Shown one piece after another: positions 7,640 through 48,855 of a stretch of 64,000 nucleotides of DNA. The position numbers and the translations under genes are program-made. A model generated the notes under the pieces. That model worked only from the letters and a program-made list of their open reading frames with translations. It was not told the DNA's origin and ran no database searches. Each line of letters starts with the position of its first letter. The first letter of the stretch is position 1. The DNA is from Diplonema japonicum (taxonomy: Eukaryota > Protista > Euglenozoa: Diplonemea), in the NCBI GenBank assembly GCA_964019335.1, contig OZ025706.1, forward strand, positions 62,001-126,000, read 5' to 3'.

Positions 7640-10494
7640 TTAAATCTCTTTACTGTCCAACTCCCACGGGGCTGGCTTAGGGACTATTTTCTGGAGCATA
7701 AATATGAGCTTGTCGATAATGATTGGAGAGACCTTTTGTTTAAATAAAATAAAATCTTATTCCTACCCTTCGCGCATACCTTTTCTGAGTAGTCATCATT
7801 GAGGCAGGCAAAACGTGTCACCCCGTCGCTGAGCCGGCTGTACATCTTCTCTGTATCAGTGGTGTCCTTGACCATTGTGAAGTAGCCCTGCTTGCTTGAA
7901 GCGGTAGAGTACTTTTTAACAACAGAATTCAACGCTTGTGTGATGTCTTCCCTGCAAGACTCCTTCAGTGCCGTTACCTTGACGCCTGATGCAGCTGCCT
8001 CCGTGCACACTGGGGTCAGAAGTTCCCCCAGCTCCTTCTTTTTCTTCTCAGACCATTTCGCAGGGTGCTGTCCCGCTATGCGGCACATGATGTCTGTGAT
8101 GCCCACATCACCCAGGCTCGTTTCCAGCCCCCCTAGCACGAGCTTCGATGTCCCCAGCAGCACGTCCTCGCTCAGCGACTGCATGAACCACGCGTACCCG
8201 AAGTTGGGCTCGAAGTCTCTCGGTGTTCTGAACTTGTTCCTGTTCAGGTCCTTGAACTCCTCTGCAAACTCCCGCCTCACCTCCGCCTGCAGTATCTTGT
8301 CAAACACCGGTGGAACATGTGCCTGTGACAACCACGTCATCTCGGGTAATCTGAAGTAGTTCTCGACCACTTTCTTGGTGTGCACCAGCGAGTCTTTGTA
8401 CGGCCCTGTTTTATGCGCGCTCGCCCTAAACTTCACCCTGTAGTACTGAACTGTGCTCAGCAGGTTGTCCCCCAGCACAGCAGACGGCGGTGTCGGCCTC
8501 ACAACCATGAAGTCGTCGTCCATGGAGAGGTACCGCAGTGCGAGGTGCGGGATGCTCCACAGCCTCGACTGGATGGAGTTGCTGTTCAGCTGTGGGAGTT
8601 CATCCCCCGAGAAGATGGCGCTGTGCGGCACGTAAGACACATAAGGGTTGCTGTCGTTCAGCCAGTCAGGCTTCGGCGTCCCGCTCACCACCCAGATGTG
8701 CCGCACCCATGGCATGAACTTCCTGACGCTTCGCAGCCCATAGCGCAGCTGCCCCGTGTCTCGCGTTCTGCTCTTTCTTTTGTCTTCTCGCTTCTGGGAA
8801 TATTTAATAGTTTGCTCGATGAGCGCAGGGTCTGACCCGTTCACCCACGTGAAGACAACATCGAACCCAGAGCACCCCGGCAGCACCTCGTATGTCTTCG
8901 TTCCATTGTAGTGAGGGTAATCGCAATCCATGCCCAGCCACCCGTTGTGGCAGACACACCCTGCCTCTGTGCACACACCGTTGCCGCTGCACGTCCCGCA
9001 ACTACTGTCCAAACCGTCCAGCTTGATCTTAAGCTTGGGCTTCGGGGTGGTGACTGGCTGCAGAGCGGCTGCGGAGTCAGACTCCTTAAGGGTGCCCTGT
9101 ACCGCCTTCCGTAGACGCCTCGACATGATCTCGAGCGACTCTGACCATGCTGCGATGTCAGGCCGCTTTACAGAGCGGGCGCCGTCCAGTTCGAACTCGG
9201 ACGGGAAAGGGTAGATACGATGCAGGAAGGCCTTCACAAGCTCTCCGGACTCGGGGTTGTTCCACCCGTCGTTCACTGTAAAGAACATGTGCGGGTTCAT
9301 CACGTGCTCCGCCATTTTCTTGTACGCCGCACGGTAGTCGTCCTTCACGATGCAGAGCTGCGCGTCGAGGTCCCTGTTCCCCACGTGGTTCGAAAACCTG
9401 ATGTCGTTCTCGGCGCCCTTTTCGATCACAAGGTTGTGGTGCAGGAAGGGGATCAACACGTCGTCGTAGTACCTGAACTTCATCTTGCTGGCGGCCGTGA
9501 GCTCCTTCGGCCAGATATCCCACATCATAGCAAAAGCTTTCTTGGAGTACACGAAGGGTGCGTGCTTCACGAACTTCCTGGTGCGGTACCCGTGTCTGTC
9601 GCTGAGCATTCCGATAGTGTGGTACACAGACCCGAGCCATTGCTTCTGCCGCAGCCTCTTCAGACGCTTGTAGTCGTCTGTGCCACCATTGACGGTGTTC
9701 CCCTCGTGGTAGAGGCGGATGCCGCCATCGTCTGTAATGAGGTCTGACTGGTGCATGGGCTGTAAGGTGTGAGTTAAACTTAGCTGCCTGCATACTCTTC
9801 CTATTATGTAATCGTCGTTCATGTGGACGAAGATGTCAGTGAGCCCCTCTATCCTGTGCATGTTCTGCTCGATGACAGCAGAGTTGAAGGCAGGCTGCGC
9901 ATCTCTGTTAAGGCTGACGAGAAATCAAATGACATACTTTTGGATGATGCTGTTCTGGTCCACAAGCTTTACTCTGGGGTGCGATTTGTTCAACCATGTC
10001 GGCCAGTGCCCCGGTGCGACGATAAAAATGGTGCCGTTGTGCCATGGCAGGTTTGCTGCGAGGGATCTGAAGGAGTGTAAGAGCTCTTCGGTTTCTCGGT
10101 AGCGAGACTCAGAACCCTTCTTGCCGTTTTGCCTTCGGAGCTCCCGGAAGTCAGGGTCGCTGCCGTTGACCCAAGTGTAGACAATGCTAATGTTGCAGAA
10201 CTGGTCCCAGAAAGGGTCTGTTAGTGCTCTCTTTGATCGCCACCCAGGCCGCTCAAGGCTGTATGAGGTACTAAATGTAGACACAGATACTCCTTTAAGG
10301 TACCCCATGCTGACTAGGTTCATCATCACGCAGATCAGTGCTGCTACAAGAACCGTAGCGAACCAACCCCCATAGTTCAGCTTGCTCTCCTTTTTAGTAT
10401 CTGCCCTCCCGCTCTTTCGGAGATCAGCCCGCACCTCGGTCTCCCCTGCATCCTCATTAGGCTGCCGCCGGAGTACGGGCACCCGCGAGGTCAT
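7640..10494 (-). CDS. Type II membrane Stealth-family hexose-1-phosphate transferase with two complete Stealth modules separated by an EGF-like domain; introns 9905-9937, 9760-9795, 7733-7779
   Basis: Module 1: VYTWVNGSDP, ELLHSFRS, AFNS..IE, MNDDY, HAPF, TVNDG. Module 2: VFTWVNGSDP, LRYGLRS, LNSNSIQ, MDDDF, HVPP, CLNDD. CSGNGVC...CVCHNGWLGMDC EGF. N-terminal TM. The spliced end reads VPKPAPWEL. Confidence 0.88.
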
Positions 10495-43574: not shown

Positions 43575-46500
43575 TAAATTTTAAGCATTTGGCGGTAATA
43601 GGCGATGTTTAAGGGCAAATCCCACTCGAGGACCACCCTTAGGGGGGGTGGGGGTCTATCTCTTGATGCTTCCTTTTTGGAGCCTCGCTTTCGTTCCGAT
43701 GGCGGATACCAGTGTCTTTCGCAGACTGTTGATGCGGTCCTTCTTCAGGTTGGTCTTCAGCTCTCTTAGCCTGTCCTGGGTTTCTCGTGAGGCGAAGATC
43801 GGTCTCCTTGCAAAGCCTATCGCCGCCTTCCCTCCTATTGCCATGAGGGACTTCACTCGTTCTTCGCCGGGAAAGGCCTTTTCCTTCCTTGTAATGCGCA
43901 CCTGTCGTTCACCTTTTGGATCAGTTTCTTGATCCTTCGCGCCTTTTCATCCTGCGTCATTCCCAGCGATCTTCGTGTCGTCGCTTCGAAGTCTAGGGCT
44001 AACTCCACCGCCGTCACCTCCGACGTCGTGTCTTCTTTAACCCATCTTAGCTCCGACATCCATTTCAACAGCGACTCCGCGTACATCCGCAGTATCCCAC
44101 TTGTCGTCCCGAGCTGTTCCAACGTCGGCGTCAAGTGCTTTACTCCTACCACTTTCCGTTCCCACGGCAGTTCTCCTCCAAAATCCTCCACTTGGATCAG
44201 TTCTTCATCACGTTTTGCTACTATCATCGCCAGGTACCTCTGCAACCTCTCCAGGTGTGCAAATCCGTGCCCCCTCGGCAAGATCCCGTGCAGTTCCAGG
44301 CAGAGAGGCCAGCCCGACCTGTCGCGTAGCGGTTCCAACCCGTCCCTCGCCAGCTCTTCCAGCGCAAGTGGGCATTCGTACAGCTGGTGCCGTAGCAGCG
44401 TCACTGTGTTCTGGTGTACTGCTGTGCATATGTCGCATCTATAATTCTGAGGAAGCATTGTCTCTCCGGGTGGTCTCCCGTCCTCTCTTTTCAAGTCATC
44501 ATTGTCCGGTTCCTCTTCCTCACTTGCCGGGTTGAGCGGAACGGTTTTCGGTCCCGCACTGGCGTGTGGGCTTATGTAGGGGACTGCTCCTGCTATGATC
44601 CTCCTGATCTGGTAGGCTACCACCGGATCCCTCTCCTCCTTCCACAGCCTATTCGTTTCAGGGTCAGCCCCAGCCTCGAGTCCTCGTACCGTGCTCCTTT
44701 CCTTCGTGAGGTCCCCGCACCGGGCCTTCCTCACAGCTTCCCTGAAGACGTGTCCTCTTTCTGGCCATCCCATGTTCTTGCAGTCCGTCAATCGGCTCCA
44801 GCTCCATCCGATGTACGGCAGCCATCTTTTCATCAGGTTCCCAACCGGACCTCTTGGCGCCCCCCCTTCCACGTAGCGTTCTGCTATTTTCTGCAACCTT
44901 TGTCGCAGTCCTTCCTTTTCCATGCCCTCGGATATCATTTTGAGGGACCGGTACGCCACTAATGAGGTAGGGTCGTTGGTGTGTCCCTTCAGCAGGACTG
45001 CATTCACAGCAATAGGCGAGCGGCCACGGTGGTGGGGGCCCCATAGGCATACTGTGATCCTCGTCGTCAATTTCTTGATCGTTTCCTTATTCGGCGGTGA
45101 GAAGGGGCTCGCGTATAGGCAGGAGGGCAGTATCGACGAGCTCACAAAGTACGCTTTGGTTTCGAAGGCCAGGTTCGTGTTCCCCAGTCTATCCAGGGAC
45201 CCGAATGCTTTGGTCGATGGGGCGTTCCATGTCGTTCCTGCTTCCATGCTCAGCTGCACCCCGAGTGCCTTCAGGCTCTTTACCGTTTTGTACGGCACTG
45301 TGACCTCAACGCCCTTCCGGCTCTCCTTTCTGTTCCCCAAGACCTCGGATTTGAACCCTCTCGCCGTGCCGAAGGCAACGGTCTTTGTGTCGTTCAGCTT
45401 CATGTCTGTTAGGGTGCAGAACTCCAGTGCGCCATCTATCCCTGCCTGCAGAATCGAGCGGAGCTTCGCCAGGAGGTATGCATCGTCCGCGTAGGCTACA
45501 ACGTCCACCCCCGCTGCCTCCATCGTCTTGATCATCACAGAAAGCAGCGCGTTGATGATGATCACCGACAATGGGCAGCCCTGGAGGATGCCGTTGGTTG
45601 CCTCGAACGGGTCGCCCACTCCAATCGGGAACTTAAACCTCCTTGAAATCTGGTTGTACATCCCTTGGAGTGCTCTCCTTATTGGTTCTGCCAGGCCCAT
45701 TGCACTCATCAGGTCCAGTGATAGTCTCTGCGGTACCATGTCGAAGCACTTGCTGAAGTCAAGGGCTATTCCTTGGAGTGGTTCTCCCTCGACTAGTGCT
45801 AGTTCCAACTTTGTACAGAGTTCCATCAGAGCTGAAGTCGTGCTGTGCTTAGGCCTGAATCCGTGCTGATTTGGCGTGATCCACCGCTCTTGCCAGCCTA
45901 GCACCTGCTTCAGTCTCGCGCTTGCCCACAGCCGGTAGATGGTGCTGGTCACCGTGATTGGCCGGTGGTTTAGGGGTGCCGACCCCTCCCCTTCGGTGTG
46001 AGCGTTACCAGGGCTGTTGTGATCTGCTCCGGCCATTGTCCTGTTCTCTCAACGAGGTTGAAGAGATCCGCGAATCCGCTGAGGATGGGCTTCGGCAGTC
46101 GCTTCAGCTCGCTGATGCGCCATCCATCCACTCCGCACGCTCCTTTGTCAGGCTTCTTCCTGATTACCTCTTTCAGGAGGTCAGCGTCTATCGCGCTCTG
46201 CGGCATTGGTTTTTCCCCGATGAAGTTTGCGTATTTCTTTCTGAACGTTTCGAATTGTGGCTCATCCTTTGGTTCCCGTGCACAGAAAATCGCTGACCAC
46301 GCCTTTCGCATCACCGCGTCCATTTCCCGCAGGTTTGCCGTCACTCCCTCCTCCGTGCTCACTGCTTCCGTTTTCTGTTCCGGGCTGTCCTTCACCCACG
46401 CTGTGATGTGCTTTCGCTCGTCCCCAAAGTCTGCGCGTATGGACCGCTCGTAAGCTTTTTTCTGGCACTCTTTCCGGTGGGCGATGAATTCGGATCTCTC

Positions 46501-48855
46501 CCCCTCGACGAAGTCCCCCGCTATGTCTAGGTTCTCCCAGATTGCATCGAAACCCTCTGTCGCATCTATCTGGCAGTATTCCACCTTGAGCGCCGCCCCC
46601 AGTTGCGAGATGTTCTTAAGGATGTTCCTCGTTTCCGTCGGCAGTGGGCCATGGTATCCCTCCTCCAGCTGAGCATGCATCCTTTCTTTGGCGATCCCGA
46701 TCTTCTTTTTGAGTTTCTCCAGTTGCATCTGTCTCGTCGGGATTGCCCCTCCAGCCTGGGTCGACGACCTCGCACTTAGTTCTGTCAGCACCGGTTTGCG
46801 GATGTTCCCTCTCCCTACAAACATCCCTCGCTGAGGTCCATCGTAGTTGTGCAGCAGGTATTTCTCCGCTATGCCTGAGATTACCGAGAAAGCGTCTGTC
46901 GTCTTGCCTTCTTCTATCAGTTTCCGGAAGTTGGAGTTGTCCATGAGGTTCACTGCGGTCCCCGGCGGTGCCTTCTTCGTCTTCGGGATCTCTTGTGGTA
47001 TGTTGTACCTCATGACGAGTTGTCGATATGCTGGGATGTTAAGCTTTAGTGACAGGCAGCGATGGTCTGATCCGAGCACCTCCTCCGTTATCCCGCAGTG
47101 TATCAGTCCTTGAGCCGCGATGTTGTTCAACAGGATCCGGTCGATCCTCGTGCCGCAATTGGACCTGACGAAGGTGTTCTCCGGCTCCTGTCCTCTCTTC
47201 TTGGCACAGAACTCAGCTGCATCCACCCAGTCTCTCTGGAGTGCCCTTCTCAGCGTCGGTGATCGTTCCTCGTCAGTGTTGAAGTCTCCGACCACCGCAA
47301 CTGGTACCTCTCCCAGATCGAACCTCACGCGTTGCAGGATGTGGTGTAGTAGTTCCTCCCTGGCGTTCTTCATTACCGGGTCCTGCCCTGAGTGGCAGTA
47401 CACGTTGATCACATGAAGCCACCTTTTTCCTGCATCCAGGGAAATCTTCACATGAGTCCATCTGTCCTTGTGGGGTCCTGGAGTCTCGCATTTTATCGCC
47501 GTTCGGGGTCTCTTCACCAGGGTTCCCAGCCCTCCCCGTTTGGCGATTGTTAGCGACGAGATCTCGTTTGCCTTCCTGCCTGGCTGCGGTTTCCCCCAGA
47601 ATCTGGTGTACTGCCTGCCCCATTCGTCATCTCTGAGCACGCGTTCCACTTCCAGCTGTGTCTGGGCTGTGAGCGCCGTCTCCTGGATGCAGAAGACGTC
47701 TGGGAGGACTCCAGCATATTCACCCAGCCTGTTGTTTAGGGCCGCGCCATTGTGCGTGAATAGGGTGAGCTCGTCTGTTCCGCGTCTCTCCAACTCGTCG
47801 TTCGCCGGTCCGGGTCCCGGGTTTGGCTCCACCCCATCCTCGACCAGTTGCTTCGATTCTCTGTCGGAGAGCAACCTCGGGTCGTGCTTCGACCGGGGCC
47901 GGGTGATCGTGTGGTGATGATTATAATTGTGATTGATGAAATTGTTTAGGTTAGGGTGTTGGCCGTTCGGCGGGGTTGGGGGTCGTTTATCATATGTCAG
48001 TCACCACCCGCCTTCCATACAACTACGGCACACGGTGGTCCTGCACTCGTTTATTATGCATTGTTGGGCCTGGTTCTTCTTGTGCACCCCTTCATCGCAT
48101 ATCTTGCACACTGCTCCCCTCCAGGTCGAGTACGTGCCGTTGAAGACGTGCGTCTTTCCTGTCACGCAAATGGTAAGGTCTCCTTCCTCCAACAGTTCCT
48201 CGTCCCCGTCTCCCCCTTCAGTTTCAATGTCCGTATCCGTCCCCGTAGGCGGTGGTCCCAAACTAGACTCAGCATTCCTTCCATCTCCGTGCCATACTGC
48301 GGGGAGCATGCTTCTTCCGACCTCTGCCCCTGCTTCACGAATACCTTCAGTTGGGCTGTTAGCTCCGTCATCGCCTGCTGTAGTTGGCGTACCTCCTGGC
48401 GTAGCTCGTCATTTTCCTTTCTCAGTTTCAGGACCTCCGACGACTCCTTTGGTTTCTTGAGTGGTCTGCCGGAGAGTTTCTGAATCGCTTTTTCGATCGC
48501 ACCTAGACGGTCTTCCATCGACGTGTTCTTTTGCACCTTCCCCTTTGTGTCTGGCGAATCCTTCGTTGCCTGAGTCTTGGAGCTAGGGGTGGGAGTAGTC
48601 TTAGCAACCCCTGCTGCCGCGTTCAGATAGGACTTGGCCCCAGCTGGCGAGGACTATTTTCTGCTCCATGTCTGCCCTGGGTGTGACTTTAAGGTGGCCA
48701 TCGGTCTGGTCGACGTATCCGACGTGATTCTGCAGTTTAGGATCTTCCCTGTCGGGGTCGTGATCCTCACCTTGTCGGTCGGAGGTTTCGTTCCTCTGAT
48801 GTACCAGCACCGTGTCCCGTTGCTCCATCCGCCTCTGACTGGTACTCCCTTCCAA
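43575..48855 (-). mobile_element. Non-LTR retrotransposon (APE + RT), 5'-truncated or interrupted; ORF1 (coiled coil + Cys finger), 2A-like peptide, ORF2
   Basis: APE motifs THNG, CIQET, NVY, VGDFN, TRIDRIL, SDH; RT motifs HRPI, QHGFR, LDFSKCFD, GILQGCPLS, AYADD; C-terminal CxxC...H....C. Frameshifts at ~45990, ~43870 and ~48280, and a TAG at ~48655. Boundaries are approximate. Confidence 0.93.
47812..47838 (-). other. 2A-like (StopGo) ribosomal skipping motif DGVEPNPG|P upstream of the APE domain
   Basis: Translation SKQLVEDGVEPNPGP; matches (D/G)(V/I)ExNPGP. Confidence 0.75.

What the first reader, a model, noticed from the sequence alone, without database searches (positions are those of the whole stretch)
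47812..48003. Retrotransposon ORF2 apparently expressed by double recoding: leaky UGA-CUG readthrough, then 2A StopGo
Seen: ORF1's Cys finger ends ...CMEGGW-TGA (48001-48003). The same frame continues with no further stop (CTG ACA TAT GAT...) for about 54 codons into DGVEPNPG|P and then the APE domain. ORF2's first in-frame ATG lies deep inside APE (DPVMKN), so it cannot initiate conventionally. Known: UGA followed by C, especially CUR, is the leakiest stop context; 2A peptides precede APE in some non-LTR elements such as trypanosome L1Tc; G(I/V)ExNPGP variants occur in insect viruses. Inference: readthrough sets a low ORF2:ORF1 ratio, and 2A then frees ORF2p from the ORF1 fusion, a compact scheme suited to polycistronic, trans-spliced expression.
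Basis: partly seen in the sequence, partly recalled or inferred. Interest (0 to 1): 0.9.

Follow-up and report, generated by a model that had tools for sequence, protein, structure and literature searches.

The report
LINE with leaky stop plus 2A
A jumping gene of the marine protist Diplonema japonicum seems to make its copying enzyme only when ribosomes read through the stop codon of its first gene and then release the enzyme with a virus-like "2A" skipping peptide; I found no description of this two-step scheme for this class of element.

Summary
On the minus strand, ORF1 ends in TGA (48003-48001). The same frame runs 63 codons without a stop or ATG into ...DGVEPNPG|P (ends at 47812), then into APE-RT. 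The window copy is a 5'-truncated, decayed member of a ~6.9-kb LINE family.

The TGA is not a copy-specific mutation. All 5 copies of this family keep TGA-CTG, and intact copies have ORF1 (736 aa) and a 1450-codon ORF2 in one frame. Nine of 12 related LINE families in this genome keep a single in-frame stop between ORF1 and ORF2, although their linkers differ in sequence and in length (20-241 codons). Eight use TGA and one uses the TMV-type CAA-TAG-CAA-TTA. ORF2 ends in TAG or TAA.

The 27-codon 2A block is under purifying selection. GVEPNPGP and GIEPNPGP are the C-termini of experimentally active viral 2As.

Programmed readthrough followed by StopGo is therefore the best explanation. Nothing here shows it at the RNA or protein level: no RNA reads were available.

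2A in LINEs and UGA-C readthrough are each known. I found no published case of their coupling, or of readthrough for LINE ORF2.

First-stage readers flagged the same cassette on other pieces of this genome. No follow-up report on it was shown to me.

The parts
43597..48854 (-). 5'-truncated, decayed copy of LINE family A (full length about 6.9 kb)
   Evidence: 99.4% identical over 5274 aligned positions to the intact copy on contig C20, with 4 deletions and 17 mismatches. The copies on C20, C60, C113 and C15 continue upstream of this copy's 5' end.
48004..48854 (-). Remnant of ORF1 (C-terminal ~285 of 736 codons): coiled coil plus Cys-rich finger. Broken by TAG at 48656-48654 and a 7-bp deletion at ~48276
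   Evidence: The intact ORF1 is in L024:6398-8605. It has a weak OTU match at its N-terminus.
48001..48003 (-). ORF1 stop codon TGA, followed by CTG; the proposed readthrough site
   Evidence: Identical in 5 of 5 family copies. No variant in contigs of 4 runs. In frame with ORF2 in intact copies.
47893..48000 (-). 36-codon linker, G-poor, rich in Pro, Asn and His. No stop, no ATG, no predicted RNA structure
   Evidence: Linkers of sister families cannot be aligned with it but are always in frame.
47812..47892 (-). 27-codon 2A-like block SKHDPRLLSDRESKQLVEDGVEPNPG|P
   Evidence: Conserved in families A, B and C with pN 0.19-0.31 against pS 0.37-0.93. Among B subfamilies pN is 0.02-0.07 against pS 0.17-0.41. 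GVEPNPGP and GIEPNPGP are the ends of active picornavirus 2As (PMC11512398).
47062..47727 (-). APE endonuclease domain of ORF2
   Evidence: Pfam PF03372, E 1.7e-13, residues 50-271 of window:45970-47874:-.
45254..45970 (-). Reverse transcriptase domain of ORF2. It lies downstream of the frameshift caused by a 1-bp deletion at ~45994
   Evidence: Pfam PF00078, E 2.5e-21. Deletion mapped.
43656..43658 (-). Original ORF2 stop codon TAG. It is out of frame in this copy after the 7-bp deletion at ~43859

Best explanation
This is a dead copy of an active, transcribed LINE family of Diplonema japonicum. The proposed way its messenger is read is as follows.

1. Ribosomes start at the ORF1 AUG and make ORF1p, which has a weak OTU-like match at its N-terminus, a coiled coil and a C-terminal Cys finger.
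2. Most ribosomes terminate at UGA-CUG.
3. A minority decode the UGA with a near-cognate tRNA and continue in the same frame through a disordered linker.
4. They then translate a 27-residue 2A-like peptide. At ...EPNPG|P the nascent chain is released without a peptide bond being formed (StopGo).
5. The ribosome carries on from Pro and makes a free APE-RT protein at a low ratio to ORF1p.

Shown here:
- the anatomy;
- conservation of the stop, the frame and the 2A block across copies and families;
- absence of a usable AUG;
- transcription of the family.

Inferred, not shown:
- that readthrough happens, and how often;
- that this 2A skips.
For: (1) TGA-CTG is present in 5 of 5 copies. Intact copies have ORF1 and a 1450-codon ORF2 frame separated by this one stop.

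(2) Families B and C are 70-78% identical in DNA to A where they can be aligned. They have the same layout with TGA-CTC and TGA-CAT. Their stop-to-PGP distances are 48 and 62 codons, against 63 in A. Subfamilies B2 and B3 have TGA-CTC and TGA-CTA, and differ by 6-nt indels.

(3) Of 12 related families, 9 have one in-frame stop. Frame 0 holds no stop from the ORF1 stop to APE in any of the nine. The other two frames hold stops in eight of the nine.

(4) ORF1 stops are TGA in 11 of 12 families, at different distances after the last Cys. ORF2 stops are TAG or TAA. A sample of 18 host ORFs uses TAA 7, TAG 7 and TGA 4 times.

(5) Family L has the exact TMV-type CAA-TAG-CAA-TTA, with 9 exact copies in the genome and 0 in the control. 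Families with TGA-A carry strong hairpins 5-9 nt downstream: D z -5.9, I z -2.6. These two signals match the type I motif in the review PMC13517186 and the stop-plus-downstream-structure class it also describes.

(6) There is no ATG between the stop and the 2A in families A, C and D. The three families whose ORF2 is not in frame (E, F, J) each have an ATG upstream of their 2A.

(7) The 2A block is under purifying selection. Its last eight residues are identical to those of active viral 2As.

(8) UGACUG and UGACUC occur as natural variants at viral readthrough sites.

(9) Trinity ORFs of EukProt D. japonicum are identical to ORF2 parts of families A and D, so these elements are transcribed.
Against: - There is no direct evidence. 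The public runs were contigs that behave like DNA, and no RNA run was on record.
- Families A, B and C have no downstream stimulatory structure. Readthrough would rest on UGA-C(U) alone, which is about 1% or so in other systems.
- The 2A core departs from D(V/I)ExNPGP: Gly stands where Asp is expected. It also lacks the Trp that is critical in Class B 2As.
- In a 2026 screen, Class B 2As from reverse-transcribing elements were not among the highly active ones.
- Families B and D have HPGP.
- The dominance of TGA may be partly inherited, since the out-of-frame families E, F and J also end ORF1 in TGA.
- The families share ancestry, so they are not fully independent.
Confidence: 0.6

Rival explanations
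1. Termination followed by reinitiation, or non-AUG initiation. Ribosomes finish ORF1 at UGA and some restart in the linker at a non-AUG codon, as proposed for human L1 ORF2. The CTG right after the stop in family A is one candidate. The 2A then only trims a short leader.
For: AUG-independent ORF2 translation is the accepted view for mammalian L1, and stop-start coupling for SART1 (PMC5972666 and PMC5009743). Family A has CTG immediately after TGA. Diplonema ambulator relatives start ORF2 with their own AUG and a leader before the 2A.
Against: Reinitiation does not require ORF2 to be in the ORF1 frame. Yet 9 of 12 families keep it there, through linkers of 20-241 codons and through 6-nt indels. 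The CTG is not conserved: B has CTC or CTA, and C has CAT. The stop is almost always the leaky UGA, or a TMV-type UAG.
Confidence: 0.15
2. Readthrough is real but the 2A-like block does not skip. The ORF1-ORF2 fusion either works as a fusion or is cut by a protease, for example the OTU-like domain carried by these elements. The block is conserved for another reason.
For: The core deviates from the Class A and Class B consensus, with no Asp and no Trp. Two families carry HPGP. Families H, I, K and L have the in-frame stop without any 2A. OTU-like domains are present in ORF1 (A) or in ORF2 (G). Class B 2As of retroelements were not among the highly active ones in human cells.
Against: The block sits exactly where active 2As sit in L1Tc and ingi and other LINEs, immediately before APE (PMC3708506 and PMC5814959). 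The P(N/H)PGP end is invariant in every intact family that has the block, while neighbouring residues vary. GVEPNPGP and GIEPNPGP end active viral 2As. His before PGP is an accepted Class B variant.
Confidence: 0.15
3. The stop is removed at the RNA level in some transcripts. This could be A-to-I editing of UGA to UGG, or removal of a small intron or internal spliced-leader addition. Either would give a sense-joined or separate ORF2 message.
For: Diplonemids edit RNA heavily in mitochondria (own knowledge). In A and C the stop is embedded in GTGAC, and a pyrimidine-rich tract and an AG follow (read from the sequence).
Against: - B and D have no GT at or next to the stop, so a shared intron is excluded.
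- There is no double-stranded structure around the UGA in A, B or C to guide editing.
- In B the first AG after the tract lies inside the 2A core.
- A spliced-leader-capped ORF2 message would still lack an AUG.
- No joint across the stop appears in the contigs of 4 runs. Two joints lie further downstream, inside ORF2, one in a single contig of X1 and one in a single contig of X4. The runs appear to be DNA.
Confidence: 0.05
4. TGA is a sense codon in this organism (a variant genetic code), so ORF1-ORF2 is simply one ORF.
For: Stop-codon reassignment exists in another euglenozoan, Blastocrithidia (own knowledge).
Against: ORF1 (736 codons), ORF2 (1450 codons) and host ORFs of up to 2103 codons contain no other in-frame TGA. 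Several host ORFs end in TGA.
Confidence: 0.02

Closest known systems
L1Tc / ingi 2A (Trypanosoma; Heras et al. 2006, as reviewed in PMC5814959 and PMC3708506)
   Same: An APE-type LINE of a euglenozoan with a 2A-like peptide immediately upstream of APE and in frame with it. The 2A is proposed to lower the yield of the downstream enzyme.
   Different: L1Tc and ingi have a single ORF that starts with its own AUG, and no ORF1. Here a 736-aa ORF1 precedes the 2A. The 2A lies behind ORF1's stop codon with no AUG, so it can only be reached by recoding or an unconventional start. The core is G(V/I)EP(N/H)PGP rather than D(V/I)ExNPGP.
2A-bearing CR1, L2, Rex1 and Crack LINEs of animals (Odon et al. 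2013, PMC3708506; Luke et al. 2013, PMC3894237)
   Same: The 2A sits in the N-terminal region of ORF2p. A PHD-like finger is associated with the 5' part of the element.
   Different: Those authors report that presence of 2A correlates with absence of ORF1, with a few exceptions (CR1-26_BF, CR1-53_BF, CR1-1_LG). They do not mention readthrough. Here ORF1 is always present and joined in frame by one stop.
Type II (UGA-CGG / UGA-CUA) and type I (UAG-CAA-UUA) viral readthrough; gammaretrovirus gag-pol (review PMC13517186)
   Same: A leaky stop sets a low ratio of a replication enzyme to a structural or RNA-binding protein. The contexts match: UGA-CUA (B3), UGA-CUG (A, as in Trocara virus), UGA-CUC (B), UAG-CAA-UUA (L), and stop plus a 3' stem-loop (D, H, I).
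   Different: The host is a LINE, not a virus or LTR element. The fusion is proposed to be resolved during translation by StopGo rather than by a protease.
Termination-reinitiation in SART1 (UAAUG) and AUG-independent ORF2 translation in human L1
   Same: The same problem is solved: getting a little ORF2p from a bicistronic LINE RNA.
   Different: Those mechanisms need no shared reading frame. There is no overlapping stop-start here, and the frame is conserved.

Membership tests
APE-type non-LTR retrotransposon (LINE) | APE endonuclease followed by a reverse transcriptase in one long ORF | tested here: met
   PF03372 E 1.7e-13 and PF00078 E 2.5e-21.
APE-type non-LTR retrotransposon (LINE) | Dispersed copies with variable 5' truncation | tested here: met
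   The window copy starts at family position 7748 and others are full length. Further truncation junctions appear as loose ends in contigs.
APE-type non-LTR retrotransposon (LINE) | Assignment to a named clade (e.g. Ingi) by RT phylogeny | not tested
   No reference LINE library was on hand. A C-terminal CxxC...H...C motif is the only hint.
2A / StopGo peptide, Class A | C-terminal D(V/I)ExNPG|P | tested here: not met
   (V/I)ExNPGP is present in A and C, but Gly replaces the Asp (DGVEPNPGP). B and D have HPGP.
2A / StopGo peptide, Class B (WxxxLxxEG(I/V)Ex(N/H)PGP; Rao et al. 2025 as cited in bioRxiv 10.64898/2026.09.24.754024) | G(I/V)Ex(N/H)PGP core | tested here: met
   GVEPNPGP (A), GIEPNPGP (C), GIEPHPGP and GVEPHPGP (B, B2, B3). 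Identical octapeptides end active picornavirus 2As.
2A / StopGo peptide, Class B (WxxxLxxEG(I/V)Ex(N/H)PGP; Rao et al. 2025 as cited in bioRxiv 10.64898/2026.09.24.754024) | Invariant upstream Trp, and Glu before the Gly | tested here: not met
   No Trp is present. Phe sits one residue out of register in B and C, and A has Glu at that place. Asp or Gln precedes the Gly.
2A / StopGo peptide (any class) | Ribosome skipping demonstrated in a reporter | not testable with these tools
   Needs a translation assay.
Programmed stop-codon readthrough | A single stop followed by a long in-frame ORF that is conserved among relatives | tested here: met
   9 of 12 families. Intact copies have 1428-1451 open codons after the stop.
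Programmed stop-codon readthrough | Known leaky context or 3' stimulator | tested here: met
   UGA-C in A, B and C (UGA-CUA in B3). UAG-CAA-UUA in L. A hairpin 5-9 nt after the stop in D, H and I. Family A itself has only the UGA-CUG context and no structure.
Programmed stop-codon readthrough | Readthrough product or ribosome footprints observed | not testable with these tools
   No RNA or ribosome data. The runs found were contigs.

The most novel reading that the evidence does not exclude
A whole clade of diplonemid LINEs expresses ORF2 by programmed stop-codon readthrough and uses three different signal types. These are UGA-CUN in an unstructured C-rich linker, UGA-A plus a 3' hairpin, and a TMV-type UAG-CAA-UUA. 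In one subclade the readthrough product is resolved during translation by a 2A StopGo peptide. This would be the first LINE shown to use readthrough for ORF2, and the first natural readthrough-then-2A cassette.
Probability: 0.5. Interest if true: 0.8.

Novelty: new variant of a known kind. Interest (0 to 1): 0.7.

Why it matters
How LINEs translate ORF2 from a bicistronic RNA is a long-standing open question. The accepted answers are reinitiation, stop-start coupling or an IRES. A LINE clade in which sequence conservation points to readthrough would add a fourth mechanism.

It would also revise the published view that 2A in LINEs goes with loss of ORF1. And it would give a compact two-step natural cassette that sets a protein ratio at the stop and separates the products at the 2A.

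The genome holds several signal variants side by side (UGA-CUN, UGA plus hairpin, UAG-CAA-UUA, and NPGP against HPGP). They can be compared directly in reporters, and they bear on termination fidelity in Euglenozoa.

Tried and rejected
- **Copy-specific nonsense mutation:** rejected.
- **Variant code with TGA as a sense codon:** rejected.
- **Shared intron spanning the stop:** rejected, because B and D have no GT at or next to the stop.
- **Internal spliced-leader acceptor in the pyrimidine-rich linker:** unlikely. In B the first AG falls inside the 2A core, and no AUG would follow.
- **ATG in the +1 frame 5-11 nt after the stop in A, B and C:** looked suggestive, but it is absent from B2 and B3.
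- **RNA structure after the stop in family A:** none. MFE is -3.7 over 66 nt, z -0.8.
- **Relatives with DNA context in other species:**
  - The metagenome scan gave only seven loci at 24-26% identity, too distant to be relatives of this LINE clade; I did not examine them.
  - The viral contig scan gave nothing.
The DNA around the Diplonema ambulator, Logan and ENA relatives (P0003, P0008-P0011, P0018) could therefore not be read.
- **RNA evidence:** The look-up of sequencing runs listed no RNA run. The four runs laid were contigs that break at copy variants and truncation junctions, as DNA does.
- **Whole-genome letters:** For families D to L only 1.8-kb junction pieces were read.
- **Literature:** searches for readthrough in non-LTR elements found nothing that describes it. 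From memory, some older papers on plant LINEs may mention in-frame stops. I could not check this.
Full report
**What is at the site.** The feature lies on the minus strand. Translation shows ...CKICDEGVHKK...CRSCMEGGW, then TGA (48003-48001), then CTG ACA TAT. A 36-codon linker rich in Pro, Asn and His follows (48000-47893). Next is a 27-codon block, SKHDPRLLSDRESKQLVEDGVEPNPGP (47892-47812). It runs straight into an APE domain (PF03372, E 1.7e-13) and a reverse transcriptase (PF00078, E 2.5e-21). The 63 codons hold no stop and no ATG. From the stop to the start of APE (77 codons), the two other frames hold 2 and 4 stops. The first in-frame ATG (DPVMKN) lies past the THNG and QET motifs. A conventional start would therefore give an endonuclease without its N-terminal part, which by my own knowledge of APE-type endonucleases includes catalytic residues.

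**The window copy is dead but its family is not.** A DNA search of the window's own 62.5-Mb genome found four more copies at 97-99% identity. Against an intact copy on contig C20, the window copy spans 48854-43597. It is 5'-truncated and lacks about 450 ORF1 codons. It carries a TAG at 48656-48654, 7-bp deletions at about 48276 and 43859, and a 1-bp deletion at about 45994. The intact element is about 6.9 kb. ORF1 has 736 codons (L024:6398-8605), then comes TGA, and the same frame stays open for 1450 codons to a TAG.

**The family is transcribed, and the organism is identified.** Proteins of the EukProt Diplonema japonicum transcriptome (EP01064) are identical to ORF2 parts of this family and of family D. 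This identifies the organism as D. japonicum or a very close strain, and shows that these elements are transcribed.

**The stop is not a copy-specific mutation.** All five family copies read TGG-TGA-CTG. Logan contigs of four runs of the same organism, from two studies, bridge the site without any variant. They do show variants elsewhere.

**Related families.**
- *Families B and C.* They are about 78% and 70% identical in DNA to A over the parts of APE that align. They have the same layout: CAA-TGA-CTC with 48 codons to ...GIEPHPGP, and AAG-TGA-CAT with 62 codons to ...GIEPNPGP.
- *Subfamilies B2 and B3.* They read TGA-CTC-CAG and TGA-CTA-CAG with GVEPHPGP, and differ from B by 6-nt indels in the linker.
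- *Wider survey.* A protein search with the 2A-APE segment found 129 matches, which fall into at least 12 families. I read one junction from each family.
- *In-frame families.* A single in-frame stop joins ORF1 and ORF2 in A, B, C and D (AAA-TGA-AGC; GVHPHPGP). The same holds in G (CGA-TGA-AAC; an OTU domain, then APE), H (AAT-TGA-AGT), I (AAC-TGA-AGG), K (CAT-TGA-ACG) and L (CAA-TAG-CAA-TTA-CAG).
- *Out-of-frame families.* In E and F, ORF2 is in the -1 frame and overlaps the end of ORF1. J is arranged differently again. Each of these three has an ATG 18-39 codons upstream of its NPGP.
- *Linker statistics.* The distance from the stop to APE ranges from 20 to 241 codons, and frame 0 never holds a stop. 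In base shuffles of each family's own sequence, the chance of no frame-0 stop over this stretch is 0.05-0.23 for A to D and below 0.001 for G.

**Stop-codon choice.** ORF1 ends in TGA in 11 of 12 families, at different distances after the last Cys of the finger. ORF2 ends in TAG (A, C) or TAA (B). A small sample of 18 host ORFs uses TAA 7, TAG 7 and TGA 4 times. The one non-TGA junction is the exact type I motif UAG-CAA-UUA of tobacco mosaic virus. It occurs 9 times in the genome and 0 times in the reversed control (motif classes from PMC13517186). UGA-CUA is the type II motif. UGACUG and UGACUC are listed there as natural variants at viral readthrough sites.

**RNA structure.** Families in which UGA is followed by A have hairpins that start 5-9 nt after the stop. 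D has a 16-bp stem (MFE -30.5 against -15.7 for shuffles, z -5.9), I has z -2.6 and H has z -1.2. H and I share the apical TCC-GGAG-GGA, but their lower stems differ in sequence and still pair. Families A, B and C have no structure there (MFE -3.7 to -5.9 over 66 nt). Their linker is G-poor. For the family in the window, any readthrough would rest on the UGA-CUG context alone.

**Is the region behind the stop translated?** The 27-codon block shows purifying selection:
- Between A, B and C: pN 0.19-0.31 against pS 0.37-0.93.
- Among B, B2 and B3: pN 0.017-0.066 against pS 0.165-0.41.

The linker itself is only weakly constrained (pN/pS 0.3-1.2 on few sites). It keeps its frame and stays free of stops. 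Families A and C have no ATG anywhere between the stop and the PGP, and D has none before its PGP. Translation must therefore enter from upstream. The conserved shared frame points to readthrough rather than reinitiation, which would not need it.

**Is the block a 2A?** It sits where 2As sit in L1Tc and ingi and in animal LINEs, directly before APE (PMC3708506 and PMC5814959).
- *For:* GVEPNPGP and GIEPNPGP are the C-termini of aalivirus, grusopivirus and potamipivirus 2As. Of these, aalivirus B1 2A2 and grusopivirus A1 2A1 gave separated products in vitro (PMC11512398). The core fits the Class B pattern G(I/V)Ex(N/H)PGP, in which His is accepted (bioRxiv 10.64898/2026.09.24.754024). HPGP is kept in three B subfamilies that have intact ORFs and many copies.
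- *Against:* The Asp of the Class A motif and the Trp of Class B are missing. Class B peptides from reverse-transcribing elements were not among the highly active ones in human cells.

Relatives in Diplonema ambulator and in unnamed Logan and ENA assemblies carry GD(V/I)HPNPGP behind their own AUG and a leader of about 10-100 residues. The 2A is thus a feature of the clade. The AUG-less position behind ORF1's stop is what is special here.

**Comparison with what is known.** 2A in LINEs is known. Odon et al. and Luke et al. report that it correlates with absence of ORF1, and they do not mention readthrough. Reviews of LINE ORF2 translation list reinitiation, stop-start coupling and frameshifting. 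Four literature searches found no description of readthrough between LINE ORF1 and ORF2, or of a readthrough-then-2A cassette. The D. papillatum genome paper only counts LINE-like gene models. I therefore class this as a new variant of known kinds.

**Earlier notes of this scan.** First-stage readers had flagged the same cassette, and the TMV-type junction, on other pieces of this genome. No follow-up report on them was shown to me, and I used them only as leads. I confirmed the TMV-type junction myself. I also saw the spliced-leader-like head with its hairpin at the 5' end of families A, B and C.

**Limits.**
- There was no RNA, ribosome or protein evidence.
- The families share ancestry, so the 9-of-12 count overstates independence. 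The differing linker lengths argue for repeated selection on the frame.

Noticed in passing
L024:6131-6180; L026 and L025, upstream of the ORF1 ATG: Families A, B and C all begin with TTTCTGTACTTTATTGG followed by a short inverted repeat (CTTTATTGG...CCAATAAAG). In B and in contig loose ends, the longer ...ACCAACGATTCTAAAGCTACAG precedes it. This looks like the diplonemid spliced leader carried at the element's 5' end, as earlier notes of this scan said.
   Followed up: partly
L030 (family D), L035 (H), L036 (I): 5-60 nt after the ORF1 TGA: Strong hairpins sit right after TGA-A stops (D z -5.9, I z -2.6). H and I have different but still complementary lower stems under the same apical TCC-GGAG-GGA.
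   Followed up: partly
L039 (G000:C77:212321-212335) and 8 other places: Family L joins ORF1 and ORF2 with CAA-TAG-CAA-TTA-CAG, the tobacco-mosaic-virus type readthrough motif. There are 9 exact copies in the genome and 0 in the control.
   Followed up: partly
L031, L032, L033 (families E, F): ORF2 lies in the -1 frame and overlaps the end of ORF1 (AAC-TGA). An ATG lies 36-39 codons before GIQPNPGP or GIHPNPGP. The ORF2 frame stays open for more than 500 codons across ORF1. Whether this is frameshifting or reinitiation is undecided.
   Followed up: no
L034 (family G; protein P0005): Behind the in-frame TGA the ORF2 frame first encodes an OTU-like cysteine protease (DGNCQF...), then a degenerate GNLPGP, then APE. 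In families A, B and C the weak OTU match is at the N-terminus of ORF1 instead.
   Followed up: partly
window 47975-47983 and the same place in families B and C: A run of 5-6 C followed by A (GACCCCCA or TCCCCCCA) lies 16-27 nt after the stop in A, B and C. The linkers are otherwise unalignable and the run sits in a different codon phase. Synonymous change in the B-subfamily linkers is lower than in the ORF1 tail. A nucleotide-level signal is possible, or it may be chance in a C-rich stretch.
   Followed up: no
L018:2400-2805 (G000:C100): A family C copy is interrupted, and a long tandem array follows that encodes the repeat ANPQTRKP in one frame.
   Followed up: no
L003:2290-3100 (G000:C60): A family A copy is cut off inside APE. 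The DNA that follows encodes ankyrin-type repeats (...GWAPVHLAASSGQLETVKYLVE...).
   Followed up: no
window 1-64000: Of the 23 ORFs of 250 aa or more, 18 lie on the minus strand, including all the longest. This fits a one-directional euglenozoan gene cluster into which the LINE copy inserted in the same orientation.
   Followed up: no
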